Shown here one piece after another: positions 43,101-64,000 of a stretch of DNA of 64,000 nucleotides (within the stretch, counting starts at the first letter, position 1; the number at the start of each line of letters is the position of its first letter). The stretch is from Lepidodermella squamata (taxonomy: Eukaryota > Animalia > Gastrotricha). The notes beneath the pieces were generated by a model. The model saw only the letters and a program-made list of their open reading frames with translations, searched no databases and was not told where the DNA came from. The stretch lies in contig JBLDXI010000023.1 in NCBI GenBank assembly GCA_047495785.1, positions 372,001-436,000 of the forward strand. The letters are read 5' to 3'. Made by a program: the position numbers and the translations under genes.

Positions 43101-44902
43101 CCACCTGCCTTGCAGCCGCAAAGTGATTTCAACTCGCTCGATATAGCGACTGATGTTCAGGGCTGGACTGGGATCATGCTGACGGCGAAATACGGCCATC
43201 TTGAGCTGTTGAGGCAGCAAATCATGGCTTTCAATGACAATCTAGCAGTTCTGAGAAAACGTAAGTTAGCTTGACTTATCTCTCGCTTAGAAGGAAGAGC
43301 AATAGAAACGAAGGCTCAACTAATCCTAGGTGCATAGTCCAAAATCATAGTCCAAATTCCCACATTTTCGGTTCCGCGCTTCTATCCCCTCCGCCCCCAC
43401 CTGTAACCTCCCTAACCAGTATCCCTTTTTATTCCTAACCTCCCTTCCTTTCACCCCTTCCTTCACTATGATTCCGGCTTTTTCTGATTTCCTACTTTTT
43501 ACTTACTCTTTCATTCTTCTTTCGTTGGATCTCTAACTTAAAGTTTTGAGCTTTATCCTCACCATTTGAGTTTCGCTTGATTTATCTACATTTTAATATA
43601 TTTTTATTGTATTTGACAGTTGTTGCTAATCAAGAGAACGAACACGGAATGTCTGCCTTGATGATGGCAGTCAAAAACAATCAGTTCGACACAGCTCGAT
43701 TTCTTCTCTCTTTTGACTACGACCCAGAAGACGACTTGAAGCCAACAGCCAGCTCATTACTAAGAGCACAAAACGTATTAGGCGAAACTCCTCTCATGGT
43801 CGCAATAAACCAAATCGGCAACAAACTGGTGTCGAATCAAAGCCTTGAAATGATTAGATTGCTGATAAACAAGAGTTCCGACCCTGAAATTCTGAAGCAG
43901 GTCGATGGTAACGGAGACAGTGTTCTTGCATTGACAGCTGCCTACAACAACATGACCGCCCTGAAAATCATAACATCAAGTCCTGGATTCACCGACGATT
44001 CGCATCTCGTGATGACGATTCAAAACCTTGTCGGAGAAACTGCGTTGATGAAGGCGCTTCAAGTTAAGGACAAACCAGTTAGCATGGACCTCATTCGATG
44101 GATGTGTGAGACCTGCTCGGACGTGCTTCGTTACGCCGATTACCAACATCGTTACCCTCTTCACGTCGCGAACAACATCCAAGCTGTGAGCTACCTCTAC
44201 GAAAAATGGCCCGAGGCTATGACAATGAAGGATAAGAAGGGCCGGACCCCTCTTATGTCCGCGATTTTGAATCACGAGAACTACGACAAAACTTGGTTTG
44301 AGATCATCCGATTCTTCATTAGCCACTCGACGTTGGGGGATTTGATGCTGTGTTCGGCTAATTCAGGTCGAACTGCGTTAATGTTCGCCGTGGATATGCG
44401 GCAATTAAACACGGTCCAGTTTATGCTTCAAACAGCCTCGAAATTACCGAATGGGGTTAATTCTTTACTGAAGCAGAAAGATTCAGATGCGAAATCAGTT
44501 GTCGAACGAGCGATCGAGAACTACTGCCTGGAAGAATGTTCGCATTCCTGTCAAATTAATCACCAGAATCAAATCGCGATTTTGAAAGAATTGTTTGAAG
44601 CGTTCGTTACGAATGGGGACAAGGAGAGTGGCGAGGCTTTGAAGGTAAAATTGGGGGAAATTGTTCATGCCAAGTTGGAAGAGTTTGGCGGGAAACATGA
44701 ACGTGATTCCGGCCATCATTCGAAGCTGAACCACAGTCACATGGCATTTTTGGAACAACTGGCTAAACTGTTCGTCTCCACGCCGAATTTGGCAGCTACC
44801 ACAGAGACGCAAACTGTTGTCGAGCCGGAGAATCTAGAGACGCATCCTGCTTTTGAGCAACAGCCGTCGATACCAGTTGAACCGCCAAAGCCGGAACATT
44901 GA
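40128..44902 (+). CDS. NLR-like STAND NTPase: two tandem NB-ARC domains + winged helix + ankyrin repeats; ~1291 aa
   Basis: Proposed exons 40128-40533, 40823-40840, 41044-41713, 41762-43260 and 43620-44902 (3876 nt, open). NB-ARC1: ITGDEGVGKTSL, LYIFDDV, CDGLP. NB-ARC2: INGPSGVGKSTL, LFTIDDF, CGGLPII, LAFLW, VQVHPLI. ANK: GWTGIMLTA, GMSALMMAV, GETPLMVAI, GRTPLMSAI, GRTALMFAV. The exon 1-2 junction is the least certain part. Confidence 0.85.
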
Positions 44903-45817: not shown

Positions 45818-45992
45818 AAGCACGCATTGCCGTGCGTTGCAGGTAATTTGATTTTTCATCTCAAGGAATTTTTTCTGTAATATTTCATGGCACGCTACGC
45901 TATTGTATAAATTTTAGTACAGAAACAAATTCCTTAAGATAAAAAACCCTATTACCTGTAGAAGGGCTAACAACGCACGGCAATGCGTGCTT
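45818..45992. repeat. Inverted-repeat element ~100 bp upstream of ankyrin copy B
   Basis: Perfect 22-bp inverted repeat AAGCACGCATTGCCGTGCGTTG / CAACGCACGGCAATGCGTGCTT. Confidence 0.75.
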
Positions 45993-46091
45993 CTAATTTT
46001 TTATTGCTTAATGATACCTTGAAATGTTTACAGTCAGTGTTGCTTCAAGTGAATTTCACTAATTTCAACAATCTCCATGTGTAAAAACACA

Positions 46092-49000
46092 ATGAGTGAT
46101 CTGATGAAATTCCTATACATACTACTTTTCGGGATTTTCATGGTTTCAGTACTTGACGCCAGAAAGATCAACTATGAAAGCGTAATACCTTTCGATCTTT
46201 CCATCTATTCCCACAGTCAAGTCTTCATTTGTTCAGGCTTTTAGCAGAGCGATTGCAACAGGCCAAATTGCGACCGTTCGACTTTTGTTGAATTCGGGCC
46301 TGGTAAACGCAAATATCTCGACCAATATAACAGATTCTCCTTGGTATCGCGAAGAGGTTATCTTGACTGCTGTTCGAAAAAATCAAAGCTACGAAATGGT
46401 TGACTTGCTACTTGAGAACGGTGCAAATGTTGAGGCGAGAAGCGAGTTAACCGATAAACTTCTGTATCAAACTCCATTTCTCTGGGCTGCAAGATTTGGA
46501 AGGCTGGATCTAGCGAGACTCCTCGTCGAAAAGTACAAAGCTAAAACTGATGTTCGAGACTATAAAGATCAAACTGCGTTAATGGTTGCCTTTGACTGGC
46601 GAGTTACTACAGACTATCTTCGATTAGCTTACTACTTGTTACCATTCGAATCGCCTAATTCCAGAAACATAGAAGGACAAACTGCTCTTCATATACTTTG
46701 CCGAGTCACAACTACCGATCCGGTACCATTTGCTAAATTGCTGGTGGAACAGTTCAAAATGGATGTAAATGCGAGAGATTACCGTGGCAACACACCGTTG
46801 CTGTACGCGGCTATAAGTGGCTATTCCATCGCTCTACTCCAGTACTTGATTGACCAAGGAGCTGATCCACAGGCAAGGAATAACGACGGCGATAACATGT
46901 TGCTGAAAGCTTGTCAAATCGATAAGCCCGCGTTGACCCATTTAGACTTCATCAAATTTGCGATTGAAGTAGGCGGCAATGACGTTAATTCGAGGAGTAT
47001 TCTTGGGGGGTGCGACTATTTTCTTCAATGGGGAATCGGTGGGGTGCAGATTGACGACTCGGACCTCATCGAAATCCTACAGTACTTGGCTAGTTTGGGC
47101 TACGATTTCGACGGACAGTATGATTCGGCCATGATTGCCTTAACTTCGGCAGCAATGGCTAATCGAAGGAATATTTTGATGGCCCTTATGGATTTGGGTG
47201 CTGATGTAAATGCAACGAATGGCCTTGGCCTGACTGCTTTGGATTATGCACAGAATAATGGAGATATAAATAACGTGGCGAATTTAAGAAGACGGGGCGC
47301 TGCCTTTGGCATGGAAGTGGTCAAATCACAGACCAAGCGCATGACCAGGAGCTCATCGATTCCAGCGACAATGTCGACTAAGACGATGACAAGTAGTCCA
47401 ACAAACATTTTCCCATTAACGCCTAGCGACGCGGCGATCGATCCGAGTTTGCAGGCGATCGTTGGTGGGGCTATGTTCAAGACAAGAGCAACTGCAGTGA
47501 CCAAGGCAAGTACTACAACGAAACCAGCCAGGAAAATTGAACGAAACGAAACTCAAGATGAGCTGAACTCGGTGGGTTGCCGTTTCTTTAATGCAATACG
47601 CTTAACTTAGTTCGAGAATGCTCGAGACTTTGAGACGTTGAATGGTCGAGTGGTTGTAATGCGTCATCAGACCTTGTGTGATCTGATGAGCGACGGTTAG
47701 ATTCCTCGTAGAGTAGCATTTTTGCGCCGCTTTTAATTTTTTAATTTTTTTTGTTAATTTTCCATTTTAATTTTTGGTCGTCGCTAGCTGCACCCGCGCG
47801 CTGGGTGCACAGAATTTGCTCGCTACACCCGAGGGTGCAGGATTATAGCTAGTTACACCCGGAAGGTGCGCGAAAATAGCTGCGTGCACCCGCATCTGGG
47901 TGCGACCATTTTGCTACGTACACCCAATACATTTGATTGGACGGTAATGAAATCACGGGTGCAGAGAGAAAAACCGCTACACCCACTTGACCGCGCGCGG
48001 CGGCTAGAGAGCCATTCATTGCGCGCCAAGGAGTTAATAATCTGTCCGGTGCCGCTGATCAATGCCATCAGTTCTAGAGTCGAGGCCTTGAAGATAGGGC
48101 TGAAAGCGCAGGCCGATTTCCAGTGTGCAAACCGAAAGCAACATCAATAGGATTAAGACGGTCGCGAGTTGGGCGCTATACCACCGCCGCTACCTTTCGC
48201 TCGCGTTCATTAACACCACTAATCAATATTCTCGAGCCGGTCTTCAATAACCTATTACCGCCCGGCTTCCTGCCTTGAACTCGTGCACCCATTGCTTGAT
48301 TTTCACCTGGAGATCAGTGTTTCCCTCGTGACCCGCAGAATGCACCATGATGGCTATGCACCCGCTGCGCCACAGTCGGAGCGGCTGCTTGTTTCCAACT
48401 GGGGTGACTGTAGGCAGTGGGGTCACTTTGACACTTGGAGGAATAGTAATTCCTAATTCCTATTCCCTATTCCCTATTCCCTCAATTCCTATACTCTTTA
48501 TTCCTATTCCTACAATTCCTATTTTCTATTCCTGTAGGCTTTGACATGCCAAAATAGGGTGACCTTGGCATGCCAAAAATCGAATATGGTAAGGTAAAGA
48601 CCTCGCGAAAGGAGTACCGTGTTGGATCGCCTGGAGAATGGGCAATATAATAATGACATATGATTTCATATTCAATTAGTCGGTTTCGGTTTAGCCGTCA
48701 CCGAAGTTTCAATTAATATTAATATACCGTATTTTTTCGAATAAGGGCCGCGGCGACTATTTTCCTGATTTTTTGAAAAAGGCCTAAAAACGCGGCGATT
48801 ATTCGGGTGCGTGTGGTCTTTATTTCGCTAGGTTTTCCGGTAAAGCTACAATTTTGCGGCGTTTAATCGGGTGCGGCCCTTATTCGAAAAAATACGGTAG
48901 AAATTGAAAAAATGCCGCGACTTCACATATTATGTCCTCTCCTAAAATGGGTTGTTATGATGCGCATTGTGCACATCCAGGCTGGCCTTTCCTTGGGCTA

Positions 49001-51554
49001 TCCAACAGTACCCCACTCACTAGGTCTTCACCTTACCATATTCGATTTTTGGCATGCCAAAGTCACCCATTCTGGCAAGTCAAAGTGACCCTATTGTGCA
49101 AAGTGCGCTAATAAGTCACCCCAGGTACGTAATTTCGCTAGCTCGCATTTTACCTTGTTTAATTACTTCTGTACACCTTGCCGCACCGACAGCCGGCTTT
49201 TTCCTAATTCCTGATTGTTTGTATAGGGTGTAGCGAGTCAAATCGTCGCACCCACACTAACGCGCGGTATAGGGTGTAGCGAGCAAAATAGTTGCACCCT
49301 TAGGGTGTAGCTAGCAAATCGGATGCACCCGCGTGTGGGTGCAAATAGCACACTCGTTAATTTTTTTAAATTGGTTTCTCCGTTATTTTCGTAATTTTAC
49401 TGTTGAGTAAATTTTAAAACGTATCCCGAACAAAAACTGCCTGGGATACGTGGCAATAATTAAACATAATTAAAATGGAAAATTAACAAAGTCAAAAGCG
49501 ACTTCACATATTATGTCCTCTCCTAAAATGGGTTGTTATGATGCGCATTGTGCACATCCAGGCTGGCCTTTCCTTGGGCTATCCAACAGTACCCCACTCA
49601 CTAGGTCTTCACCTTACCATATTCGATTTTTGGCATGCCAAAGTCACCCATTCTGGCAAGTCAAAGTGACCCTATTGTGCAAAGTGCGCTAATAAGTCAC
49701 CCCAGGTACGTAATTTCGCTAGCTCGCATTTTACCTTGTTTAATTACTTCTGTACACCTTGCCGCACCGACAGCCGGCTTTTTCCTAATTCCTGATTGTT
49801 TGTATAGGGTGTAGCGAGTCAAATCGTCGCACCCACACTAACGCGCGGTATAGGGTGTAGCGAGCAAAATAGTTGCACCCTTAGGGTGTAGCTAGCAAAT
49901 CGGATGCACCCGCGTGTGGGTGCAAATAGCACACTCGTTAATTTTTTTAAATTGGTTTCTCCGTTATTTTCGTAATTTTACTGTTGAGTAAATTTTAAAA
50001 CGTATCCCGAACAAAAACTGCCTGGGATACGTGGCAATAATTAAACATAATTAAAAATGGAAAATTAACAAAGTCAAAAGCGACGCAAAAATGCTACTCT
50101 ATGCGGAATCAAACCGTTGCTCATCAGATCACACAAGTTTTGATGATGCATTACAACCACTCGACCATTCAACCCTCACAATCACTGATTAGTGAAACCC
50201 ATTATAAGGGCAAGGGTGGCCTATTCGGAGCTTCCTATAAAATCGGAATCAGGACCCTCTGAAACGTGTAAAAATGTGTGTAAAAAACAGGGGGGTCATT
50301 TTTTCCCCGTGGCCATGTTGCTCCAATTTACGGTTCAAACAAATCAATGAGGTCATTAGAAATATGTGTGGTTCAGAACAATTTACATTCAAAATTGCTA
50401 GGCGGCAACTTCGCTGGTACGGGCACGTCGCTCGCATGGACCCCGTAAGGCTGGCAAGCCAGATGCGGTACTGGCAGCCGCCGGATGATACTTGGAGTAG
50501 ACCTCGAGGGCGACCAAAATTAAGGTGGATTGATTGCATCAAAAAACATTTGAACAAAATAGGGATTAACAATTTTGAGGAGGCCGACGCCCTGGCCCAG
50601 GATAGAACTACTTGGAGACAAAAAATTCATAGTTATTTTGGTGAAATTGAAATATCAGAGTAAGGATGAGTTTTTGAGGTTGACGATCAGGATAGGTAGC
50701 TTGCTACCGGTCCTCCTCCGACACTCGGTTCGCTTGGCGTGAACAAAATTTACATCACGCCCGGCGAATTGGGTACACCGGAGTGCAGGACGCCATTTTT
50801 AGTCGCGGCTATGTACTTGAAATCGCCAGATCGCGTTCAAGTCTACGAATATCTGCTATCGAAAGGAGCGGATGCTACAGTTAAATTTAATTCAACCGCA
50901 TATAAATACAAAAATTATACGTTGCTCCACCATGCCGCACGTGTAAATGACTCCGTATTGGCAATATGTCTCATCGAAACTGCTGGCATCGGCCTTGAAG
51001 ACCGGGAATCGACTGGCAAAACTCCGTTGATGATTGCAGCTAGTTACAACGCGAGTAAGATTGTCGATCTACTCATCAGTTCGGGTGCAGATGTAAGGGC
51101 TGTTGATAAGGATGGCAACAACGCCTTTTTGCTGGCTTGTAAAAGCAGTAACGAGACTCTGACGCTGGCAAGACGGTTCGCGAACATCCCAGGTGTGGAC
51201 GTTACTTCGCAGAGTAACAACAACGACACGTGTCTCACCCTGATACCGAAAACGTATGCGTTCAACGGTTTTGCCAAGCTTCTTGTCCAGAAGGGTTACG
51301 ATGTCAATCGAAAACTGCGGAGAGGCGATACTGTGTTGCACAGCATCGCAGCTCAGGGGACCGCGAACAATACTCAAGAATTGATTGAAGCTGGATCTAA
51401 CATGAATGAGCTGAATGAAGATGGCTATACGCCACTTGATATGGCGCTGCTTTTCCAAAATTCGGCTGCTGCAAATGCGCTGAGAAAAGCCGGGGCTGAC
51501 ACAGCTAAGCCGGCTGGTTCCATCGCAGCAACCACCAGGAGAGCTGATGGATAA
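46092..51554 (+). CDS. Secreted ankyrin family, copy B: exons 1-2 intact, 5' half of exon 3 lost and replaced by TE debris (truncated gene or pseudogene)
   Basis: Exon 1 46092-46181 (MSDLMKFLYILLFGIFMVSVLDARKINYES), intron 46182-46236, exon 2 46237-47571 (reads through to a stop at 47610 if unspliced). Module-2 remnant ~50790-51554 lacks about 180 N-terminal codons relative to copy C. Confidence 0.8.
48399..49124. mobile_element. Nested inverted-repeat element with (TTCCTA)n-like tract
   Basis: Ends CTGGGGTGACT and AGTCACCCCAG; inner ~60-bp inverted repeat TTGGCATGCCAAAAATCGAATATGGTAAGGT; simple repeat at 48450-48535. Confidence 0.7.
48727..48897. mobile_element. MITE (CCGTA-ended, TA TSD)
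   Basis: Perfect 25-bp TIR CCGTATTTTTTCGAATAAGGGCCGC with TA flanks. Confidence 0.9.
48917..50084. repeat. Near-perfect tandem duplication (581/582-bp unit)
   Basis: Units start at 48917 and 49498 and appear to differ only by one A in a homopolymer; GCGAC occurs at all three boundaries. Confidence 0.95.
50340..50663 (+). mobile_element. RTE-clade LINE 3' fragment
   Basis: RRQLRWYGHVARM...RPRGRPKLRWID...AQDRTTWR, the RTE C-terminal signature. Confidence 0.85.
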
Positions 51555-52075
51555 GATTATTATCCGGATAATTAAGACCAATACTACGTTTTCCGATATG
51601 GATTAGATGCCGAATATCGAATATCTAATAAATCTACACTATCATTCGTTATGTACTAATATTTCTCGTGAAAACAACACTCTTTTCCGTAAAAACCTTA
51701 CAACTGACAAAAAATACGAATATATCTGGACTATTAATTGTATCATATCCTCGTGTAAAACAGTTAACGACTTGTTATCTCTGGGGCAGTTGATCGTACG
51801 TTCTTTACAATAACGTATGTTATCCTAATTATAATTTATTTACTATAATTTTTACTAAGGTAGCCGAAATTATTATAACGTGGGGCTAATTTTCAGATGA
51901 GTTAGTTAAAGTTAATTTAAATTTAAATTTATCGATGTCTGCAATTTATCAGTAATAGGCAATTGCGCAAATTGCTATGTAAATTACGTCACAATCACAA
52001 GATGGGACGTCATTGTTCCAATGTTTTGAATTTGAAGCTCGAAATTGCTGATTTCTTCATCATCAGCCAGTCGAA

Positions 52076-53208
52076 ATGCCTGTTTTCAATCAGGAACGCG
52101 TCATCCGTGACCGTTCCAATCCTTTCACGGCTTTCAGCGAAAATCAGTTTTTTCTACGCTATCGTTTTACAAAGAAGTCAGTTAAGAAGATTCACAGGCT
52201 CATTAAACGGGATTTGGTACGTCGCCGGACTAACCGGGATAAATCAATTTCGACAATGCTTCAGGTACTGATCACACTGCGATTTTTCGCTACTGGTGGT
52301 TTCCAACGTGTGATAGGTATGATATCCCTATTCGGCGAAATTTTAATTGTCTCTGATGAATAGGAGATATTCACGGTGTTGATCATACTAGTGTCTGCAA
52401 AATTGTTCATCTTGTGGCTGAGGCACTTGCCAGGAAGCTGGACAAATTCGTAGTTATGCCTCGAAACAATCAAGAAGTGCGTGAAATAGCTGCGAGTTTC
52501 TACGAATATGGTGGCTTCCCGAATTGTCTGGGCGCAGTTGATTGCTCCTTGATCAAAATTCAAAAACAGTCGCATCTCCCTGACCCCGATGTTTTTTGGT
52601 GTAGAAAAAGTATTTCTTTAATTACTGAAATCGAAATGTTTCTAGGCATTTTTGTTTCAGAATATTACGCTCTCAATGTCCAAGTAGTCTGCGATTTCGA
52701 GGGCCGGATTAGGGACATAGTTGCCCGTTGGCCGGGCAGTGTTCATGACTCGACGATTTACAAGTCTTCGCAGGTGAAAAAGAAACTGCAATGTGCGCCA
52801 CGCTTCAATGGATACCACCTTATAGCCGACAAGGGTTATCAAGTCGCTCCCGAGCTGCTGACCCCTCTCAGAAATCCTACAACTGACGCAGAGTTGGACT
52901 ACAACCGATCGCTAAGTCGTTGTCGTGCTGTTATTGAACGTCTTTTCGGCATTTTGAAGAGCCGTTTTCGCTGTCTACAAAGCGTAGACAATCGCCTCAG
53001 ATTTCGAGCCGATCGCTGTGCTAATGTCATCCTCGCATGCGCTGTCTTACACAACATTGCAATCAATCTGCGCGAACCGCCGATCCTTGGCGATAATGAA
53101 ATGGAAGATGAAGTTGAGGCGCCGGAAGCTCATGATCAAGGCGAATACCTGGCTATGACACTGGGAGAACGAATTCGCCGCAGTATTATTGATCGATACT
53201 TCACGTGA
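52076..53208 (+). CDS. PIF/Harbinger DDE transposase (HARBI1-like), 3 exons, 344 aa
   Basis: Exons 52076-52316, 52364-52609 and 52661-53208. Motifs LRFFATG, GFPNCLGAVDCS (D), RKKYYALNVQ, WPGSVHDS, LIADKGY (D), VIERLFGILKSRFRCL (E), ACAVLHN. Confidence 0.93.
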
Positions 53209-53390
53209 CTATTAATGCTTTTTTGGATCGAAAATAAGCTTGCAAGAATTGATAATGGTTTATTTCAAATTCGGCTTGCCTAGCTACTAAAACTGGTCGA
53301 TCTTCTAGTTTTATCACATCTAATGTATCATGAAAAAGTGAAAAATAAGAAAGTCATTGTTCGTTGAATGTCAATCTGATTCATTCATGT

Positions 53391-54219
53391 TCAATCGTAC
53401 TTTTCGAACGGGTTCTGTTCGGAAGAGTTGAGTGAAGAAGCAAGCAGGGTGGAGGTTGATCCAGTCGCCTTCTTGTGCTTGAGCTCCTCCAGTTGTTCTC
53501 GAAGAATCGCATTTTCGAGTTCAGCTTTTTCGACGGCGAGCGACTGGAGCTTAGCTTTCTTCTCAGCAACAGTTTCGCGGCGACTCTTAGCCGATGAGGC
53601 ATGGCCGCTGGTGCCGGCAACATCGGACCCATTGTCGTCGTCATCGCCATCGGGATCTGAACCGTCGAATTCGTCAGCATCTTCCTCCGAGAGGTCGAAC
53701 TCGCCGCCATCATCTTCTTCATCGCTCAGTTCCAGGGCATCGGAATCGCGAATACCTGTGACAAGAATATTTAAAAAAGAATGCTTATATTATCAGCACT
53801 TAACCTCGCAGGCCTCGTAGTCCAGTCGGTGAAATGCGCTTGACATCGTTCAGAATTAGATATTCGTAGGTTTCGTAAGGGTGCGGCAAGGCATCATCCA
53901 ACGATTCCTCGCGGATCTTCTCGCGAATCTTGACCACGATTCGACTCCACAAGTTTTTTAGCTCATCCAGAGTGTGCAGCGGCTGGCGGTTGCCGCGCTT
54001 CTTCGCATATTCGCGCGCAATTGTCTTCCAAGCACTTTGCTTTGCCAATGCCGTCTCGTTAGATGAGTTTTTGTCTTCAAGAGTATCGAAGTGTTTCTTC
54101 GCCAGGCTTACCAGCCGCTCCTTGTCGGCCAAGGAGAAACTCGCCCGGGGTTTTCGAGCGCGCTTTGCTGTTCGGCGACGCCCGGCGGCTTTTCGGGCCA
54201 AAGCCAATGTTCTCGCCAT
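53391..54219 (-). CDS. Harbinger Myb/SANT-like DNA-binding protein, 2 exons, 259 aa
   Basis: Exons 54219-53805 and 53755-53391 (49-nt intron). FSLADKERLVSL...KQSAWKTIAREY...ELKNLW (Myb/SANT-like), acidic middle region, coiled-coil C-terminus. Confidence 0.88.
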
Positions 54220-54927
54220 TGATTGAAAATCGGATAGCAATAAAAATGATGATGATGAAGTGGATGAAAATCAATTCACGGCGTAGGTATATATACCCTT
54301 CTTCTCGGTACTAAAAACGTGTTACGCCATGGGGTATCGACTCAACAATCAGTCGTAACATATAATTTGTGCAATAATATATAGCTTTTTCGTAATAAGG
54401 GTGTGCAAATTATGCAGCAAAAATTACGATAAATGGTGTTTTTTATCATATTTCTGTGGGAACTTATGATAAATATTTGGCGGTGCAAGATAATTAAAAA
54501 ATGAGGAGATAACAGTAAATGACCTTCGATCAACTGCCCCTCTGTCTTTCCGACACCACCTGAAAAACTACACATACACTAAATCGACAAGCTCGGACTA
54601 ACTACTGTATAGCTAATGACATGGCACGATGCTATTCTCAATTACTATGTTAAAATAAGCTGAATAAGGAAATAATTTGTGTACACCCTACTCTCTTACT
54701 GTATTGTCCAAAAACTAAAACAAGTGATGACTTCATCCTAATTTTTTCTCTTGGATGCGCCCTAAGCCCACCCGTCGCCGGTGCTAATATATATTGCGTG
54801 TTGATAGGGTGTGTTGATAGCGGGGGTGCAGTTATCGAGGGAGCACTGTATTTCGAAATAAAACATTTACACACTATCATTCGTTCTTTCACCAGTTTTT
54901 TTACATTGAATCATTATAAATGTAGGA

Positions 54928-55048
54928 AATACGGCTGTTAACTGTGATATACACGAGCTACAGCGAGTTTATAAGGTCGCCAGCTTTGTTTGCTGGCGAC
55001 CTTATGAATGAGCTATCGCTCGTTTTTATTACACTTAACAGCCGTATT
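54928..55048. repeat. Palindromic (foldback) element
   Basis: AATACGGCTGTTAA...ATAAGGTCGCCAGC-loop-GCTGGCGACCTTAT...TTAACAGCCGTATT. Confidence 0.8.
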
Positions 55049-55478
55049 AGCTATTTATGCGTTGCACTCGGTCTTTTCTTCTGAAAAAATTAAATGAAAA
55101 TGAAAGTGATTTTAACATTTAGCAGTTTAATCATCGGATGTGATCATAAATTAATAGTGGAAATGAATCGTTTCGAATCCCGTATATCAGGGGAATTCTG
55201 AAGAAATTAACAACAGAGCCATTTACAGCACTATGAAAATGCTGCGATTGGCGATACCAAATTTTTACGAGACGGGAACAACGCTTTTCTTGGCGGAAAA
55301 CTTATGAATTTGATGTGTTGAAACAAATCCCATCATTGGTAATAGGTAATCTACATTCTAAATAATAATAGTAATTGTAGCAGTTAGAAAACATAGCAAA
55401 GAGCAGCTGGGACAGTTTAATTTAGTTTACAGGAAAAACACTCTTAAACCACTATAGCAGTGTGTGTATTATGGCTGT

Positions 55479-55540
55479 GGCCGTGGTCTTGTTGGTTAGA
55501 TCGCAGCTGTCCAACGCAAGGACGCGGGTTCAACTCTCAG
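55479..55540 (+). repeat. tRNA-derived (SINE-like) head
   Basis: GTGGTCTTGTTGGTTAG (A box-like) and GGGTTCAACTCT (B box-like); the acceptor stem does not close. Confidence 0.5.
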
Positions 55541-55989
55541 TAAGAACTTTCATTTAATGATTTCCGGTGGTACAAAAATTATCGATACAATAACAATGTT
55601 ATTGTACCGGCCAAAATACAAATAACAGACGTTTAAGGTGGATTTTTTTAATTTTATTTGTCAAATTGCCTAACTCGACCACTCGCCCCCTGACTGAACT
55701 AGCTAAAAGAACACGCATTTTTCTTATTTCTTAACTAGTTTTGTTATAATAAATAAGGAAGATCCCGGTTTTTTTGCTCTAAGAGATGCAAATCATTATC
55801 GCAGTATCATTACTTTATTGAAATTTTCAAAATTTTCAAAACGTATGGCATCGTGGCAAAGGTCCGTAGGAGGGCGGAACTGAAAGAGGGTGATGAAGTC
55901 GTCCCTATTTCCGTTCGACTCAGCTACTAGCTTGTATTGTTGATTGCTCGCGTTGGCTCCAAAGGCTGCTCCATCTCCGAACTATAAGA

Positions 55990-56420
55990 GAGCATGGGCG
56001 AGGCTGCTCCTCCAGCTTCAAGATTCGGTAATTGAAAAGAGCATTCATTTACGCATCGCCCTTTCTGGTATTACTTCATTGGGCATCAACTAGTCCACCA
56101 GGTACATTTCCGCACGCAGTGGCCAGAGAGAATCTTCTTAATCCCGGCTTTCGACACTGTGTTCTTCACCAAAGCGTCGATGGAATGCTCGCCCAATCCT
56201 CTTGTAGAGCGCTCTTTTGATCCTATTCGCAGTTCGGAATTGAACTTCTTCCAAAAAAACCGATTGTTAGGCGCGGACAGCGTTGTAGTCCAGCAGCAAG
56301 ACCAGCAAAAAGACACAATCGACTGCCTGGAACAGCGTACGCTCTTGGTCCGCTTCTTCTTCTTCTTCTTCAGCTTCGAAGCCACGGGTTCCAATGAGGC
56401 GGGGCGTCCAATATAAGCAA
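55990..56420 (-). mobile_element. Possible Crypton-like tyrosine recombinase remnant
   Basis: GLGEHSIDALVKNTVSKAGIKKILSGHCVRK resembles the ..AG....S/T.HS.R box; a downstream frameshifted ALFNYRILKLEEQ resembles the catalytic Tyr box. Lies between 13-bp inverted repeats CGGTGGTACAAAA (55565 and 56588-56600). Confidence 0.45.
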
Positions 56421-56634
56421 TTTTCCGTGAAAGCAACCGCAAAAATGATGCGTGAATTAAATCGCGGTATCGAAAAATGAATAAATAGCAATGATTTTTG
56501 CAAAACGTTAGTGAAAATATTAGGATGGATTTTTTTAATTTTAGAAATTCACCCTTGCTGTCTAGCTATCCTACCCGGTCCGGCTCGTTTTGTACCACCG
56601 AACGATAAAATGACTAGTTATTTTCACTCAAAAG

Positions 56635-56949
56635 CGAGCGAAGCGAGAAAATTTTGAAGATTTTCCACTGAAACACGCTCCAAAACCTCTCAAAATTAAC
56701 GAAACAATGGGATAAATTCTTGTTTTGTTGTCTGGACCGGCCTAGCTGGGGGGATGATCCCCCCATCCCCCCTGAAAGTCGCACACTGTTTCGGCAAAAC
56801 ACCGAGCGAAGCAAGAAAATTCTGAAGATTTTCCACTTCATGCTCCAGAAAATTAACAAAAGGGTTGGATAAATTCTGTTTTCGTCTTCTGGCCCGGCCG
56901 AGCTGAAGGGAATGATCCTCCCATCCCCCTGTAAGTCGCACACTGTTTG
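56635..56949. repeat. Two diverged tandem copies of a ~168-bp unit
   Basis: CGAGCGAAGC.AGAAAATT.TGAAGATTTTCCACT...AAGTCGCACACTGTTT at 56635 and 56803. Confidence 0.8.
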
Positions 56950-57343
56950 AGAGTAAAATCACAAGTCATGTTAAGAAAGTTGAGAAATGCGGACAACTTT
57001 TCCAACCCCTAAGTTCCGTGATCGCACCAAGATCATTAAACATGAATAATTGTTGAGAAATGTTGTCGCCCTCCCTCCATGGTATGACGTAAACGTTGCA
57101 TTACACGTTATTTTTTGCCTTCGTCTGGCACTTGACTTGCTTATCATTGAAGCAATTTGTATGAGATGGCGTTAACGTGAGTTAACGGAACAACATTCCT
57201 CAAGCTGAAAAAATTCACATTTATGCCTAATAGCAATGTTGTGCTTTCATAGCTTAAAAAACTTACTGCCAGTATTTTTTCAAGTGAGTTTATTGTTTCA
57301 TCAATTGCAAACCTCTCTTTCATCGAAGTAGTTTTGAAGCGCG

Positions 57344-60300
57344 ATGAAATCTATTTTTCTATTATTACTACATATATATTTTACGGCTGCAAAGAATCCA
57401 TCGAGGATTAATGACGGCCCGCATGATGTCGACTACGACAGCGTAAGACCTTGAAGTTTCTAAATTCTCAACCAAGTCTTTTGAGCAGGCTTTCAACCGA
57501 GCAGTTGAGACGGGACAAATTGCGATAGTTCGCCAAATGCTAGATTCCGGTCTTGTTTACGCAAATTCAACCTTCTTCTTTTACCCGGAACACCAGCCAT
57601 TTATCGTGAATGCAGTTAGGACGAATCAGAGCTACGAAATGGTCGAGCTGCTACTGCAAAACGGCGCACAAGTAGAAGCCAAGAGTTGGCGTTACAATGA
57701 TTCGAGAACCCCATTTCTCTGGGCTGCAAGAGTAGGCAGGCTGGATCTAGTGAGACTTCTCGTTGAAAAGTACAAAGCTAAAACAGACGTTCGAGATACG
57801 AAAAGTCAAACAGCGTTGATGGTTGCCTTTGACGGCCCAATCACCCAAGACTATCTTCGACTAGTTTACTATCTGTTACCATTCGAGTCGCCTGCTTATA
57901 GAAACAGGGACTGGCAAAGTGCTCTTCATATACTATGCCGAGTAACAACAACTGATCTATTACCTTTTGCGAAATTGCTGGTCGAGCAGTTTAAAATGGA
58001 TGTAAATGCAAGAGATAACAATGGAAACACGCCGTTGCTATTCGCGGCCAGAGCTGGCGCTTCCACGGCATTTCTTCAGTACTTGATTGACCGAGGCGCT
58101 GATCCGCAGGCGAAGAATAACGAAGGCGAAAACATGTTGCTTCAAGCTTGTCGTACCGATAGTGGTGAGTTGGGTCACTTCGCCGTGATCAAGTTCGCGA
58201 TTGAAGTTGGCGGTAATGACGTGAATTCGATGGCGAAATCGGCAAGCTGCCTTTATCACCTCATGTGGCGTTATTGGCCTTATGGATTGAGTGAAGGGGA
58301 ACTCCGTGAAATTATGCGTTACTTGGCTAGCAAAGGCTACGATTTCAATGCTAAGGAAGGATTTTCGGGTGATACGCCTCTAACGTCTGCGATCAAATTC
58401 TCGTACACTCAAGGCGATAAATATATGGCCTTGCTCGACGTAGGTGTTGATGTGAATGCAACGAATGACGAGGGCGAGACTGCTTTGGACATAGCGACAG
58501 CGAAGAGGGGAACAGTCATGATCGGGAATTTGAGAATGAGAGGCGCTGCTTTTAGCAGCGAATTAGCCAATGGATCATCGGTAAGTCGCGTAACGCAAGC
58601 GATATCAACGGGTCCAGCATCCAGCTTGCCGACGACATCTACAGTTATTAATGTTACCAATAAGTTTCCGTTAACGCCGAGTGATGAGGCGATCGATGCT
58701 GGTTTGCAGCCAATTGTTGGGGCGATTGTCAGGGCGAGAGCTACTTTGGCTACGAAGGCGACTACCACAAGCCATCCTGCAGTAAAGCTCAGACAGACAC
58801 TAGCGCGGAACGCATCTCAAAATGAGCTTAACGCGGTAGGCTGCTTTGTATATATCGCTAGCGACGTTGAATAACTCGGATTTAGGCTTGTTTACATCCG
58901 TTTCAAAGTGAGAGGAGACAAGTAAAAAGTCTATTGTTTTGTGTCTCCATTCCCGTTAAAAAATGCCGCTTTTTACTTGTCACTCGTCGCCTTGAAACGG
59001 ATGTAAACAAACCTAAATCCGAGTTATTCAACGTAATTCAAATCCATGGCTTGGATAATCCATGCCCGTGGCCAAGCGTCAGAGTTATTTATTTATTTAT
59101 TTATTTAATGAGCATGATATCCAGGAAGGAAGCTCGATAGTGAAAAAAAGAAAGTGCAGCCGCAGTAGAGTAGTCAGAGTGCCATGATAGTATCAGTTCC
59201 GTTCAGGTATCCGGTGAATTATTTTATGATTTTTGAATTATTAGAAAAAGCAAATGGTTTTTTCAGCAGTTCCAGGTAAGTTTGTTGGCGGCAGCTATTA
59301 GCCGAGATAGCACTTTGTGCATCCGTAGACAGATTGTTGAATAGTATCGCCCCTCGATACGCCAAAGTCTTTTGACCCTGTGCCGATGTTAAATTAGGGA
59401 CAACGAGCGCTTGTGTGAACTGACTACGCATCATTTTTTGCGTAGGGTCAAACATCTTGCGAGAGAACAGATTCACAAGACTTTCTGGGGCTTCGCCATT
59501 CACACATCGCCACACCAATGTCGCCAGGTGCACATCGCGTTTGCCTCGCATGGGTAACCAATTCAGTTTTTTCCTTAACTCATCTGCATCAGCGTTCTTC
59601 GGAGCCTTCATTATTGTTCGAACAGCCATATCTTGAATGCGTTGGATCGGTATCAGGTTCGAGTCGGCAGACTGCGCAATGACATTGTCGGCATAGCATA
59701 GTTAACAACAGACAGTGGGATTACTCCTAGGCTTATGCCCATGCTTTCCATAGCGCAGCACAATAGGTCAGAAAGATTGACATTTTGCCCCTCCGACGCC
59801 TTCGATTTAGTAATGAACAGATCTTTTTGAGAGAATAACTTCACCCTGTTGGTTTCTTCTTCCAATTTCTTGAACTTCATGTGAATGTTCTAGGAAAAGC
59901 ATCTAGCGGGTTGGTTGTTCAAGCTGTGAGAATGACAATCACAGCCATGATGTGCATCGGAGTCCTGCTATGACTTTGTATAGATAGCCCGTCGAGAATA
60001 TATAGATGGATCATGATGCGAGATGATTAAATTTCTTTTTTTTTACACTTTTTCACAGAGATTGTTTGGTTATGTAAAATCTGGTAACGTAACTGCCGTT
60101 CGCGAAATGATTCGGCTCAATCAAGCCCGCGGAAATGCTCTCCTGATGCAATATCGTCATTACGATTATTTCGACGGTTGCCGCGACCTTGCTTACGACC
60201 AACCCATCCCAGCGCTGGCTGCTGCTCTAGGCGTCAATAACACATCGCTGGAAATGCTCGAAATTCTTCTGGAAAACGAAGGCGACGCAAATGCGATTCA

Positions 60301-61414
60301 TCCCAATCTTGAGAAATCTGCTCTAAGGCTTGCCGTGGAACAAAATCGCCTTGATCTGGTTCAATTGCTCGTCAAATATGGCGCAGATGTTGATTTGGAA
60401 TCTAATGGAAGAACGGCGATACTCGAGGCTGCATCCAAGAATCTTGAGATTGTTAGATTCCTATTTTCACAGGGTGCTTCTAAATACGTTGATCGAATCA
60501 TTTTCGAGGCTTGCCGGATCTCCGATATGCCTGCTCTCCCAATGGTGAAATTTGCAATCGAGGAAGCTGGAAATTCCGTTTCTGACAAGGAAACTGAAGG
60601 ATGGGCCCCTCTAGTAGTCGCGGCTATTTACTTGAAATCGCCAGATCGCGTTAAAGTCTACGAATATCTGCTATCGAAAGGAGCGGCTGCGACAGCTAAA
60701 TTTAATTCAACCGCATATAAATACAAAAATTATACGTTGCTCCACCATGCCGCACGTGTAAATGACTCCGTATTGGCAATATGTCTGATCGAAACTGCTG
60801 GCATCGGCCTTGAAGACCGGGAATCGACTGGCAAAACTCCGTTGATGATTGCAGCTCGTAACAACGCGCAAAATATTGTCGATCTACTCATTGGTTCGGG
60901 TGCAGATGTTACAGCGTTAGATAACGACGGAAATGACGCCTTCTTGTTTGCTTGCTCGAATGATGACATGAGCCTACTGCTAGCCTGGCGATTCATCAAC
61001 TTCACTGGATTGGACGTCAATCGGCAGAACGAAAACAACGATACTTGCCTGAGTCTGATTTTGAGGAATGCTTATTACAATATCAGGATAGGATGGATCA
61101 GATACGAGTTGAACGGTATCGCGAAACTGCTTGTTCAAAAAGGGTACTGCATCAACCGGAAATTGCAAAACGGAGATACTGTATTGCATATCCTTGCTGC
61201 TACCCATGATTTATCAAAGAACGCTCAAGAATTAACTGAAGCCGGATCCGAGGTTAACGCACTGAATGACGATGGCTATACTCCGTTAGATTTGGCACTG
61301 CTATTTCGAAATTCGCGCACTGCAGATGTGCTGAGAAATGCTGGAGCTGTTACAGCTAAACCAGCGATGTTGTTTTTGACTACAACACGGGTGAATGATT
61401 TAGAAGACGATTAG
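57344..61414 (+). CDS. Secreted two-module ankyrin-repeat protein, copy C; intact, 3 exons, 933 aa
   Basis: Exons 57344-57442 (MKSIFLLLLHIYFTAAKNPSRINDGPHDVDYDS), 57489-58835 and 60059-61414; both introns phase 0 GT-AG; 2802 nt open. Many TP(L/F)L..AA...G...LV..LL..GA.VN repeats, an S/T-rich linker and numerous N-X-S/T sequons. Confidence 0.9.
58864..59034. mobile_element. Hairpin MITE in intron 2 of copy C
   Basis: ~43-bp inverted repeat ACGTTGAATAACTCGGATTTAGG.TTGTTTACATCCGTTTCAA. Confidence 0.85.
59085..59880 (-). mobile_element. L2/CR1-group LINE remnant with (TAAA)n tail
   Basis: IQRIQDMAVRTI...LNWLP...LATLVWRCVNGEAP...GQKTLAYRGAILFNNL (ORF2 C-terminus); TTATTTATTTATTTATTTATTTA at ~59085-59107; 59653-59880 weakly resembles ORF1. 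Confidence 0.8.
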
Positions 61415-63380
61415 ATGCCGAACGCCGACTACGTAATAAGCACGCGTTATTCTCATTTCTTTTTCTTTTGTGTTGTTCCAGATTATTCTGTCAGATGAAT
61501 AAACAGTTCGCAAACTTAACAATAAACTTAGCTAGAGCTCATTAAGCGTGGAATATTATCGGACTCGGATCTCGGATCGCTTGTTGGTATTTCCTTCTAG
61601 CAATATAAAAGTTTAGGCATGGTGGCTTCAATAACTCACAACGAAAATGGACCAAATGTTCAACGCAATTTCAAGTGTTGAAGAATAACCAGAAAAACAG
61701 AGGGAATTCCTCAACAACTAGTAAATAACAGGCGCCCGCTAAGCGGGCGCCAATGTATACTCACTGTGGAATTTCTCAAATTTCGGATCACTGGTAACCG
61801 CGTCGACTACACTGATGGGTTCTAAAATCTCAACTAAAGACACGTCCCTGAGGTTAGCGCACGTAAGATTCGTCATCAACACGGTCGATTTGATTAGAAA
61901 GCCCAGATAGAAATGTGAATATATGAAAGGGTTAGCATATCTGATTCATGCACAGGCAAGAACACTTGTAACATGGTTAAGTCGAATTAGTTCAGTCCTT
62001 GAGGTGATGGGTTACTCCCCGAAGGTTTTACTGTTGTTTTTCTTACTCAGCATAGTTAATTCATTAATCAAATGATCTTGGTAGATGCTCTACAGACCTG
62101 AGCCAGTCTCAGAAGATCTTGCAATGGATGAGTGAGGTTAAACCTAAAAGGGATGCGTAACATGAACATCCAACATCTTGCAAAGGACGTTCATGAGATG
62201 TGAAAACACTAATTAACCATCTATTTCTACGAAATCAACAAATCTAAGTAAGAAAAGCAGTAGTAAAAGCTTTTAAAAGTCGCCATTCGCCCTCAAGGAG
62301 TAACATCTAGAGCGTCTTCCCTCATGGTACCTGTGAATAGTGACGACAATGCATGAGATCAGCATAATTAATTTTTTTTCGATTTATTTGCTTTTCTCAT
62401 GCTGTAGTTATCAATTCGACCATGCTGAGCACGAATTTACCATGCCCCGACCCCGTGGACGTGTCCTTGGTTGAGATAATGGAACCCCAAAGGTCAGGCG
62501 ACGCGGCGCCCGGCGACCGGAATTTTTGAATTTCCCCGCAAACGCGTCGCCATGGAAAATATTTAAATTTTAATTAATAAGAATTTGATTTAGTAATTAA
62601 CTAAGAGTTTAAAAATGTTTTCGTATTTTAAATTAAATTGCGTTCAAAATCAGAAAGCGCTCTATTTGTTTTTTGGCATTTTTGACACTGCGGATTTGAC
62701 GTATTCGAAATCTGGCATTTTTCGCTCGAGTAGTTTTTTATTCTCTATCTAATGACACTAAGCACTTGGCTACCCAGTGAGTAGAAGTATACTTTTTAAG
62801 CATGCCGCCGAATACAAAGGAAAATTCAAATTTAGCCGTTGAGGACCTTCGTCGTTTAGTAATATAGATGGTTCTCGAATTGGGAATCCAAGCTCCTTAA
62901 TCGATTTCATTGAAGGCATTTTAATTTTCTCCGTTATTGAGAAGTCCTATCGCCCATTTCAGCAGGCAAGTGGGAAATCTCAATTATCACAGAGGTGAGG
63001 GGGACCCTTTAGTCATATAATTGAAGCCCGAGAATACCCCATAGTTCGAGGATCCTACTTCGCGCATTGTTCCTTCCTTTGTGTCTGAATATAGATGGTC
63101 TGTTGAGATCCTCTTTTCTGTAATGATTGTACAGCTAAACACGAACATGCGAATACAATAGCGTAGGTAATGCTTGCGTAATGTGAGTTGACATATTACT
63201 GAATAAATTCCTCACGATAAAAAAACTAGTTGGCGTGCCTGTTGGCTAACCACGCACGACAAAGCCGTGTTAGAATCGCGTTATTTATTGCTCCTTGCTG
63301 ATATCTGGAAAATTTTACAGTCGGCTTTGTTTCGAGTGAATTTCAGCAATTTCAAACCTCTCTGTGTGCTCTGGTTAACT

Positions 63381-64000
63381 ATGAAATTGATATTTCTACT
63401 TTTTGTGGAAATATGTTTCATGGGTACGTTAATTGCTGCTAGGCAAATCGACTACGACAGCGTAAGACCTGAATACTCCTTAACTCATCCAAAATCAGTT
63501 TTTCGTTCAGGCTTTCAACCAAGCAATTGTATCGGGTCAAATTGCGACGGTTCGGCAAATGTTAAATTCCGGCCTGGCTACCGCGAATTCTGCGACCAGT
63601 CGATGGAGTTTTCGATGGGGATACTCAGGCCCAGCTATCGTGGCTGCTGTTCGAACAAATCAAAGCTACGAAATGGTTGAATTGTTACTTGAAAGCGGCG
63701 CAAATACTGAGGCGAAAGATGATGGTTACGATTTTAGCTCATTGAAAACCCCATTCCTATGGGCTGCGAGACTTGGCAGGCTGGATCTAGTGAGACTTCT
63801 CGTCGAAAAGTACAAAGCTAAAACTGATACTCGAGATAACATAAGGCAGACGGCGTTGATGGTTGCCTTGGACGGCCCGATCACCCAAGACTATCTTCGA
63901 CTAATCTACTATTTGTTACCATTCGAATCGCCTAATTCCAGAAACAGTGACGGACAAACCGCCCTTCATATACTATGCCGAGTCACAACAACGGATCCAC
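63381..64000 (+). CDS. Secreted ankyrin family, copy D (5' part; runs off the window)
   Basis: Exon 1 63381-63461 (MKLIFLLFVEICFMGTLIAARQIDYDS), intron 63462-63510, exon 2 open from 63511 to the window end (AFNQAIVSGQIATVRQMLNSG...KTPFLWAARLGRLDL...). Confidence 0.9.

What the first reader, a model, noticed from the sequence alone, without database searches (positions are those of the whole stretch)
46092..64000. Family of secreted ankyrin-repeat proteins with hypervariable, aromatic-rich loops on a constant scaffold (natural DARPin-like recognition system?)
Seen: four paralogs (A 28783-31657, B, C, D) share a hidden first exon ending [DN]Y[DE]S followed by a 46-55 nt intron; in B, C and D it encodes a classical signal peptide. 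Then come ankyrin module 1, an S/T/P-rich linker and ankyrin module 2, with many N-glycosylation sequons (NQS, NVT, NNT, NST, NYT, NAT) and no TM segment. Helical frameworks are nearly invariant (NQSYEMV.LLL.NGA, TPFLWAAR.GRLDL.RLLVEK, YLRL.YYLLPFESP). The loops between them differ in both length and sequence and are rich in Y/W/F/D. Loop 1: SSYRIDDAGA / TNITDSPWYREE / TFFFYPEHQP / ATSRWSFRWGYSGP. Loop 2: KNYDYEAK / RSELTDKLLYQ / KSWRYNDSR / KDDGYDFSSLK. Module 2: ERQGDYDASACAFLDWEQ versus QYRHYDYFDGCRDLAYDQ, and PKTYAF versus LRNAYYNIRIGWIRYEL. Established: animal ankyrin repeats are almost always intracellular, and the beta-hairpin/helix-1 face is their binding surface, the one randomised in engineered DARPins. 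Inference: a diversifying repertoire of extracellular two-headed binders (immune recognition, symbiont control or toxin/effector).
Basis: partly seen in the sequence, partly recalled or inferred. Interest (0 to 1): 0.9.

Follow-up and report, generated by a model that had tools for sequence, protein, structure and literature searches.

The report
Signal-peptide ankyrin gene family cluster
A small tandem family of animal genes encodes ankyrin-repeat proteins that, unusually, begin with a secretion signal and differ mostly in aromatic-rich finger loops; this fits secreted binding proteins, but two of the four copies are broken, and neither secretion nor diversifying selection is shown.

Summary
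The window has four paralogs. A (minus strand) and B are broken. C looks intact. D is cut by the window end. B, C and D start with a 27-33-codon exon that has the n/h/c layout of a signal peptide. It ends in [DN]Y[DE]S and is followed by a 46-55 nt GT-AG intron. Copy C reads 33+449+451 codons: about 10 ankyrin repeats, an 88-residue disordered linker (33% S/T/P), then about 12 more repeats. There is no TM segment.

Hairpin tips differ at 65% of columns against 34% elsewhere (p=7.5e-7). The first two hairpins are lengthened and hold 21% F/W/Y against 8% in the scaffold (p=0.001). Their DNA is no more alike than shuffled sequence, while intron 1 keeps 64-67% identity.

Diversifying selection is not shown. 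Loop dN matches or exceeds scaffold dS, but loop dN/dS is at or below about 1, and the loops are saturated and carry indels. A 240-nt gene-conversion tract (97% identity) shows that part of the "constant scaffold" is concerted evolution.

No specific relatives turned up in any library. Secreted ankyrin effectors are known in oomycetes; none was found described for animals. Interest is about 0.6.

The parts
28883..31649 (-). Copy A, a broken gene given as one part. It holds the tail of exon 1, a 54-nt intron 1, module 1, the linker, a 54-nt intron 2 and module 2. It has no start codon or signal part, two frameshifts, one in-frame stop and one 11-codon duplication.
46092..51554 (+). Copy B, a broken gene given as one part. 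Exon 1 (signal-type) is 46092-46181, intron 1 is 55 nt, and exon 2 (module 1 plus linker) runs 46237-47571 with its donor kept. Inserted repeats follow, then a 5'-truncated module 2 remnant that is still an open frame. Breaks: one insertion/deletion complex that removes the acceptor and about 180 codons.
47637..50173 (.). Inserted element inside copy B. It is bounded by 113-140-nt inverted repeats and contains an internal 581-nt tandem duplication (48917-50084).
57344..57442 (+). Copy C exon 1: 33 codons with signal-peptide layout, ending in DYDS.
57443..57488 (+). Copy C intron 1: 46 nt, GT...AG.
57489..58835 (+). Copy C exon 2: 449 codons. Ankyrin module 1 is residues 1-361 (about 10 repeats). 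An 88-residue S/T/P-rich disordered linker follows.
57567..57599 (+). Hypervariable hairpin 1 of copy C module 1. It varies in length among copies, is aromatic-rich and has low pLDDT.
57684..57707 (+). Hypervariable hairpin 2 of copy C module 1.
58836..60058 (+). Copy C intron 2: 1223 nt, GT...AG, phase 0. It holds a 66-nt-arm inverted repeat at 58864-59034. The same intron is 54 nt in copy A.
60059..61414 (+). Copy C exon 3: 451 codons plus stop. This is ankyrin module 2 (about 12 repeats), with variable loops near 60149-60205 and 61070-61114.
60626..60865 (+). Gene-conversion tract shared with copy B (50811-51050). Identity is 232/240, against about 65-70% in the flanks.
63381..64000 (+). 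Copy D. Exon 1 (27 codons, signal-type) is 63381-63461, intron 1 (49 nt) is 63462-63510, and exon 2 starts at 63511. The frame stays open to the window end, where the copy is cut off.

Best explanation
This is a lineage-specific tandem gene family in an animal genome that I could not place.

Product of an intact gene (model: copy C). Two introns are removed. The first lies right after the signal exon. The second lies between the linker and module 2. The 933-residue product would enter the ER through a 16-23-residue cleavable signal peptide. It would be exported as a soluble, probably glycosylated protein: two ankyrin solenoids of about 10 and about 12 repeats, joined by a flexible tether of about 85 residues rich in S/T/P.

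Binding surface. I infer that ligand specificity sits in the hairpin fingers, above all the first two of module 1. These are 2-7 residues longer than the usual 14 and are rich in W, S, Y, F and D. Similar loops occur in module 2.

Evolution. The family changes by tandem duplication, by gene conversion that homogenises framework stretches and moves hairpin variants between copies, by small duplications and indels inside hairpins, and by decay through frameshifts and repeat insertion.

What is shown and what is inferred. Shown: gene structure, domain content, the pattern of variability, the conversion tract and the broken copies. Inferred: splicing, secretion, glycosylation and the binding role.

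Biological role. My split, given that the proteins are secreted binders, is roughly 0.4 recognition of microbes or other non-self, 0.3 an effector or venom-like protein aimed at another organism, and 0.3 something else such as matrix, adhesion or reproduction.
For: - Four paralogs and only ankyrin domains.
- Conserved GT-AG introns of 46-55 nt. Read-through meets a stop near the intron or leaves the ankyrin frame. Exon 2 lacks its own start and is constrained from its first codon.
- Exon 1 keeps a hydrophobic core and small -1/-3 residues in B, C and D despite low sequence identity. It resembles the N-termini of the neighbouring class C receptor-like genes.
- No TM segment and no KDEL-type end.
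- Linker is 33-39% S/T/P with pLDDT below 50.
- Sequon excess in module 2 (p 0.02-0.05), with several sequons at matching places in more than one copy.
- Scaffold dN/dS is 0.13-0.28.
- Hairpin tips are variable at 65% of columns against 34% elsewhere, p=7.5e-7; the segment after helix 2 is variable at only 12%.
- Loop DNA is at the identity of shuffled sequence in most pairs, while intron 1 keeps 64-67%.
- Loop F/W/Y is 21% against 8% in the scaffold, p=0.001.
- Conversion tract of 232/240 identical bases.
- Both modules are predicted as ankyrin solenoids, with DARPins, ankyrin-R/B and espin as nearest folds.
Against: - There is no transcript, protein or population data.
- No dedicated signal-peptide predictor was available, so the call is heuristic.
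- The h-region of D holds a Glu, and -3 is L or I in B and D.
- Only one copy is demonstrably complete, and two are broken, so the family may be decaying.
- Within-loop pN/pS is at or below about 1 where estimable (one pair, C-D, is nominally 1.25 on 23 codons). The synonymous rate is also raised in the variable patches. This fits unconstrained loops plus misalignment as well as it fits selection.
- Non-consensus hairpin positions vary in every ankyrin family.
- Cysteines are few and not arranged as in typical extracellular domains.
- Module 1 shows no significant sequon excess.
Confidence: 0.55

Rival explanations
1. Relaxed constraint rather than diversification. The family is an ordinary, partly decaying tandem cluster. 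The frameworks look constant because purifying selection keeps the fold and gene conversion homogenises them. The loops look hypervariable because they are structurally free, collect indels and become unalignable. No selection for new specificities is involved.
For: - Within-loop pN/pS is at or below about 1, above 1 in one pair only, with saturation.
- pS rises together with pN in the variable patches.
- There is a clear conversion tract, and pS is mosaic between regions.
- Two of the four copies are broken.
- For the most distant pair, scaffold dS of about 0.9 already predicts near-random loop DNA.
Against: - Loop composition is not what drift predicts. F/W/Y is twice the scaffold level and about twice the level I estimated from base composition, with W, S, Y and D enriched.
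- Loops stay in frame and free of stops in B, C and D.
- Loop pN is at or above scaffold pS in 6 of 6 pairs, including the closest pair, and significantly so in 3.
- Loops are less alike than the intron.
Confidence: 0.3
2. The proteins are not exported. The hydrophobic first exon acts as an uncleaved membrane anchor or an organelle-targeting segment, or it is skipped in the main transcript. The ankyrin modules then work inside the cell or in an internal compartment.
For: - Ankyrin repeats are overwhelmingly cytosolic in animals (general knowledge).
- The D core is 18 residues, close to anchor length.
- Few cysteines, and no sequon excess in module 1.
- C, A and D have a Met at codon 17 of exon 2 that could start a shorter product.
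Against: - B has no such Met, and the 16 codons before it are constrained.
- The cores of B and C are 14-15 residues with small -1/-3 residues, which is typical of cleaved signals.
- Even an N-in anchor would put the ankyrin part on the luminal or outside face.
- The S/T/P tether and the module 2 sequon excess fit the secretory route.
Confidence: 0.12
3. The family descends from a bacterial Sec-secreted ankyrin protein acquired by horizontal transfer and later fitted with introns. Its odd secretory architecture would then be inherited rather than invented.
For: The best word-based hits include bacterial ankyrin proteins. The top hit, P0001, has a signal-like N-terminus followed directly by an ankyrin cap, which is the same layout.
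Against: - Identity is only 26-30% and is generic to ankyrin repeats.
- Two spliceosomal introns sit at conserved places in the copies that retain them.
- G+C is like the neighbouring genes.
- No bacterial relative stands out in 1.84 billion representatives.
Confidence: 0.05

Closest known systems
Designed ankyrin repeat proteins (DARPins) and natural ankyrin binding domains (ankyrin-R/B, espin)
   Same: They have the same fold and are the nearest structures (Foldseek E about 1e-15). Variability sits on the hairpin tips and the helix1-helix2 turn, the surface that is randomised in DARPins (the DARPin design is from general knowledge).
   Different: These are natural genes with a signal-type exon. 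They have two solenoids on a tether, and hairpins that vary in length as well as sequence. DARPins keep loop length fixed and are made in the cytoplasm.
Secreted ankyrin-repeat effectors of oomycetes (P. sojae ANK family, PMC11139960)
   Same: A signal peptide followed by ankyrin repeats, in an expanded, fast-evolving gene family.
   Different: No specific sequence relationship was found. The host here is an animal, judging by its transposon relatives and receptor genes. The two-module architecture with a tether is not described there.
Latrotoxins of widow spiders
   Same: They are extracellular animal proteins with long ankyrin arrays. A latrocrustotoxin is the best PDB sequence hit (E 2e-33).
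   Different: The similarity is confined to generic ankyrin repeats. The family here has no domain ahead of the repeats: they begin right after the signal exon. The repeats form two arrays of about 10 and 12 rather than one long array.
Variable lymphocyte receptors of jawless fish (LRR-based), as a functional analogue only
   Same: A repeat-protein scaffold that is extracellular, with variation concentrated on the binding face (general knowledge).
   Different: The fold is different. There is no sign of incomplete germline genes flanked by cassettes or of somatic assembly. The copies here are whole paralogs or ordinary pseudogenes.
Sec- or type IV-secreted ankyrin proteins of bacteria and of symbiont phages
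   Same: A signal-like N-terminus directly followed by an ankyrin cap, as in hit P0001.
   Different: The genes here have spliceosomal introns and lie among animal-type genes. Identity is at most 30%.

Membership tests
Ankyrin-repeat superfamily | Matches to Pfam ankyrin models above the curated cut-offs | tested here: met
   Ank_2 E 1e-21 to 9e-38 for six of the seven pieces scanned, including both modules of A and C. The short second piece of A's module 1 passes only Ank_4 and Ank (Ank_2 is below its cut-off). No other domain was found.
Ankyrin-repeat superfamily | Stacked helix-turn-helix solenoid | tested here: met
   AlphaFold gives pLDDT 72 and 71, with 21 and 27 helices in pairs. The nearest folds are DARPins, AnkB/AnkR and espin.
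Classical secretory proteins | N-terminal n/h/c signal peptide with small -1/-3 residues | tested here: met
   B, C and D have a charged start, a 14-18-residue core (KD 2.2-2.9) and A at -1, with L, T or I at -3. This is a heuristic call only.
Classical secretory proteins | Positive call by a trained predictor on the spliced protein | not testable with these tools
   No SignalP or DeepTMHMM was available. The joined model has no reference and was not submitted.
Classical secretory proteins | No membrane span or ER-retention end | tested here: met
   The maximum 19-residue KD is below 1.5. The C-termini are not KDEL-like.
Diversifying recognition repertoire (DARPin-like in nature) | Variation concentrated on the binding face | tested here: met
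   Hairpin tips 65% and helix1-helix2 turn 57% variable, against helix 2 at 34% and the post-helix 2 segment at 12%.
Diversifying recognition repertoire (DARPin-like in nature) | Excess of nonsynonymous change (dN/dS above 1) at those sites | tested here: inconclusive
   Loop pN is at or above scaffold pS in 6/6 pairs, with p<0.05 in 3. Within-loop pN/pS is at or below about 1 where it could be estimated, and the loops are saturated and carry indels.
Diversifying recognition repertoire (DARPin-like in nature) | Many intact, expressed members | tested here: not met
   In this window there is one apparently intact copy, one cut by the window end and two broken. The genome-wide count is not available.
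Oomycete secreted ANK effectors | Sequence relationship to that family, in an oomycete genome | tested here: not met
   No specific hit in 5.8 billion clusters or 1.84 billion representatives. The transposase relatives are all from animals.
Latrotoxins | N-terminal non-ankyrin domains ahead of one long ankyrin array | tested here: not met
   The repeats start immediately after the signal exon. There are two arrays split by a linker. Similarity is limited to the repeats.
Cassette-assembled receptors (VLR-like) | Incomplete germline gene with flanking donor cassettes and somatic assembly | not testable with these tools
   Only germline sequence of one window is available. The copies are full paralogs or pseudogenes. 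One germline conversion tract was seen.

The most novel reading that the evidence does not exclude
The cluster is part of a germline-diversified, extracellular, ankyrin-based recognition system. That would be a third repeat or domain scaffold, after immunoglobulin and LRR, used by an animal for variable binding proteins. Specificities would be carried by extended aromatic hairpins, and broken copies would serve as reservoirs from which gene conversion moves hairpin variants into the working genes.
Probability: 0.12. Interest if true: 0.9.

Novelty: new variant of a known kind. Interest (0 to 1): 0.6.

Why it matters
Ankyrin repeats are among the commonest binding modules, but in animals they work almost entirely inside the cell. 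A family with a secretion signal, a mucin-like tether and antibody-like loop chemistry would show that nature has used the DARPin principle outside the cell. It would also offer natural examples of length-variable ankyrin paratopes. The cluster shows how such a family turns over in 35 kb: duplication, conversion, hairpin indels and transposon-driven decay. If secretion or selection fails the test, it is simply one more fast-evolving, lineage-specific ankyrin cluster.

Tried and rejected
- Word-based homology search with module 1 of C gave only generic ankyrin proteins at 30% identity or less.
- Exhaustive phmmer search. The top 150 were all giant multi-repeat ankyrin proteins, at most 41% identity over short stretches. 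Inspection of four hits from the two homology searches (P0128, P0147, P0158; P0001) showed none with the family's architecture.
- Exact look-ups of six window proteins and one contig look-up returned nothing, so the source genome is not in those collections.
- Search with a neighbouring receptor-like protein to place the organism found nothing. I set the threshold at 1e-10, which was too strict and wasted one capped search.
- The transposase search says 'animal' but no more than that.
- Two metagenome scans. The first found nothing. The second gave 35 loci that match the short TPFLWAAR-type pattern. I opened only the best one (L001), which is a generic NACHT-type ankyrin protein.
- Rfam found nothing in the window.
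- Literature searches found the oomycete family, bacterial effectors and latrotoxin, and no animal family of this kind.
- My first helix-versus-loop count for module 2 was invalid, because partial rows were counted as differences. I replaced it with pairwise sliding windows and with a category count on module 1.
- An ungapped identity count for the conversion tract used wrong offsets. I replaced it with an aligned count.
- Latrotoxin membership was considered and rejected: no N-terminal domains, and two short arrays.
- Horizontal transfer from bacteria was considered and judged unlikely.
- The joined spliced model (exons 1+2+3) was not searched or folded. Exons were handled one by one by reference, and the pieces of the broken copies were kept apart.
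Full report
**Setting.** The window is eukaryotic, with 37-46% G+C.
- It holds five intronless paralogs of a class C receptor-like gene (ANF_receptor plus 7tm_3).
- It also holds exons of an arginyl-tRNA synthetase and NACHT/STAND NTPase and ankyrin ORFs at 40128-44902.
- It carries transposon remains. A DDE_Tnp_4 ORF has named relatives that are all animal 'HARBI1-like' proteins, at 33-43% identity.
- I take the source to be an animal but could not place it further. Six window proteins are absent from the exact look-up, one gene has no record in the contig index, and a receptor-based search found nothing.

**The copies.** Self-comparison and tblastn with copy C find four copies of the ankyrin family and no further fragments.
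- A lies on the minus strand (about 28883-31649).
- B spans 46092-51554, C spans 57344-61414, and D runs from 63381 to the window end.
- DNA identity between copies is 69-78%.
- Every coding piece matches only Pfam ankyrin models.

**Gene structure.**
- In B, C and D an ATG opens a short exon of 30, 33 and 27 codons that ends in [DN]Y[DE]S.
- A GT...AG intron of 55, 46 and 49 nt follows. A keeps only the last codons of that exon and a 54-nt intron.
- Reading through the intron meets a stop within a few codons of it in A, B and C, and shifts out of the ankyrin frame in D.
- Exon 2 has no in-frame ATG at its start, and B has none for about 50 codons.
- The first 26 codons of exon 2 show pN 0.10-0.19 against pS 0.30-0.71. 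They are therefore translated and need an upstream exon.
- A second phase-0 intron follows the linker. It is 54 nt in A. In C it is 1223 nt and contains a 66-nt-arm inverted repeat. In B only the donor survives.
- Copy C therefore reads 33+449+451 codons.
Each was used by reference on its own.

**State of the copies.**
- C has open exons and intact splice signals.
- D is open as far as the window goes.
- A lacks a start codon and the hydrophobic part of exon 1. It also has two frameshifts, one in-frame stop and an 11-codon duplication.
- B has lost the acceptor and about 180 codons of module 2. In their place are an element with 113-140-nt inverted ends and a stretch that, from memory only, looks like the tail of a non-LTR retrotransposon ORF. 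No Pfam match confirmed this.
- The pieces of A and B were always compared apart.

**Secretory features.**
- Exon 1 of B, C and D has a charged start, a 14-18-residue hydrophobic core (mean Kyte-Doolittle 2.2-2.9 over 11 residues) and Ala at -1 with L, T or I at -3.
- This is the same layout as the N-termini of the neighbouring receptor-like genes, whose ligand-binding domains must be extracellular.
- The three exons differ widely in sequence but keep this character.
- No 19-residue window in the mature parts exceeds KD 1.5, and the ends are not retention motifs.
- The linker is 83-88 residues, 33-39% S/T/P against 12-14% in the body. It is predicted disordered (pLDDT below 50) and has a conserved central motif under purifying selection.
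- N-glycosylation sequons exceed shuffled expectation in module 2: C 8 against 3.5, B 7 against 2.9, A 5 against 2.2 (p 0.02-0.05). They do not in module 1. Several sit at matching places in more than one copy.
- These features fit export but do not prove it.

**Fold.** AlphaFold models, built with only the paralogs as alignment, give ankyrin solenoids for residues 1-361 of exon 2 (pLDDT 72) and for exon 3 (pLDDT 71). The low-confidence stretches fall exactly at the variable loops. The nearest solved folds are DARPins, ankyrin-B/R, espin and RNase L. The best PDB sequence hit is the ankyrin part of a latrocrustotoxin, followed by ankyrins and NOMPC, which is generic repeat similarity.

**Variability.**
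- In module 1 (B against C), hairpin-tip columns differ at 65% and the helix1-helix2 turn at 57%. Helix 1 differs at 39%, helix 2 at 34%, and the six residues after helix 2 at 12%. Hairpin against the rest gives p=7.5e-7.
- The first two inter-repeat loops are 17 residues in C, against 14-15 for the others, and they vary in length among copies.
- Their residues are 21% F/W/Y against 8% in the scaffold (p=0.001), with W, S, Y, F and D enriched.
- Their DNA aligns no better than shuffled sequence in most pairs, while intron 1 keeps 64-67% identity in all pairs.
- Small internal repeats in the loop DNA of C and D point to slippage or duplication.
- Toward the C-terminal repeats of module 1, whole repeats including helices diverge. 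The 'constant scaffold' description fits the first half best.

**Selection.**
- Nei-Gojobori counts give scaffold dS 0.45-0.91 and dN/dS 0.13-0.28 for all six pairs, so the fold is under purifying selection.
- Loop pN (0.40-0.63) is at or above scaffold pS (0.34-0.53) in six of six pairs, significantly in three.
- Within the loops, pS is raised as well and pN/pS is at or below about 1 where it could be estimated. It exceeds 1 only in pair C-D, on 23 codons. The same holds for the large loop of module 2 (pN 0.38, pS 0.54), although its N:S ratio differs from the rest (20:7 against 35:56, p=0.002).
- With saturation, indels and only four sequences, faster-than-neutral change is suggested but not shown.

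**Concerted evolution.**
- Synonymous divergence is mosaic along the genes.
- B and C share a 240-nt tract that is 232/240 identical, inside flanks of about 65-70% identity. The tract covers a long hairpin of module 2.
- Gene conversion therefore helps keep frameworks alike and can carry a hairpin variant from one copy to another, here between a broken copy and the intact one.

**Relatives and literature.**
- Two large protein searches and two metagenome scans found only generic ankyrin proteins.
- The open literature searched has a secreted ankyrin effector family in oomycetes (PMC11139960), bacterial ankyrin effectors and latrotoxins. It has no signal-peptide ankyrin family in an animal.

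**Verdict.** The most likely reading is a lineage-specific family of exported two-headed ankyrin binders that evolves by duplication, conversion, hairpin indels and decay. The claim of a diversifying recognition repertoire remains a hypothesis. I rate it a new variant of a known kind, with interest 0.6.

Noticed in passing
window 760-3042(-), 4617-6931(-), 11971-14181(-), 15753-18101(-), 33517-35751(+): Five intronless paralogs of a class C receptor-like gene (ANF_receptor plus 7tm_3), 77-79% identical in DNA among four of them. Two copies (4617-6931 and 33517-35751) are split into two overlapping or adjacent ORFs and so may be broken. A word-based search found no relative at E<=1e-10.
   Followed up: partly
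window 40128-44902(+): ORFs with NACHT/NB-ARC/STAND NTPase matches (40128-40631, 41739-43274), followed by an ankyrin-repeat ORF (43577-44902). This is an NLR-like gene or genes lying just upstream of copy B. Its ankyrin part is not a member of the signal-peptide family.
   Followed up: partly
window 52414-53208(+) and 53800-54240(-): A DDE_Tnp_4 (Harbinger/PIF-type) transposase ORF and a Myb_DNA-bind_5 ORF sit side by side between copies B and C. The named relatives of the transposase are all from animals, at 33-43% identity. Its integrity was not assessed.
   Followed up: partly
window 47637-50173: An element with 113-140-nt inverted ends and many 31-33-nt subrepeats. It includes a 581-nt internal tandem duplication that is 99.8% identical (48917-50084), so the duplication is very recent or an assembly effect.
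   Followed up: partly
window 50274-50663(+): A 129-codon ORF next to the remnant of module 2 in copy B. From memory it resembles the C-terminal tail of non-LTR retrotransposon ORF2 proteins. No Pfam family matched.
   Followed up: no
window 22789-24795(-): Exons of an arginyl-tRNA synthetase (tRNA-synt_1d; PDB hits to yeast, human and bacterial enzymes). This is the only clearly housekeeping gene seen in the window.
   Followed up: partly
window 58864-59034: A near-perfect inverted repeat with 66-nt arms (89% complementary, 39-nt spacer) inside the enlarged intron 2 of copy C. It is possibly a miniature inverted-repeat element that helps explain why this intron is 1223 nt instead of about 54.
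   Followed up: no
window 45924-46092 and 63202-63381: Copies B and D share about 170 nt of similar sequence upstream of their start codons. The upstream sequence of C is different, and A has unrelated G+C-rich sequence there. The duplication unit therefore included the promoter region for B and D.
   Followed up: no
window 3398-3707 and 11132-11442; 56635-56948: A 310-nt repeat, 87% identical, lies in the spacers between receptor-like genes. A roughly 160-nt tandem duplication lies upstream of copy C. Neither has an explanation.
   Followed up: no
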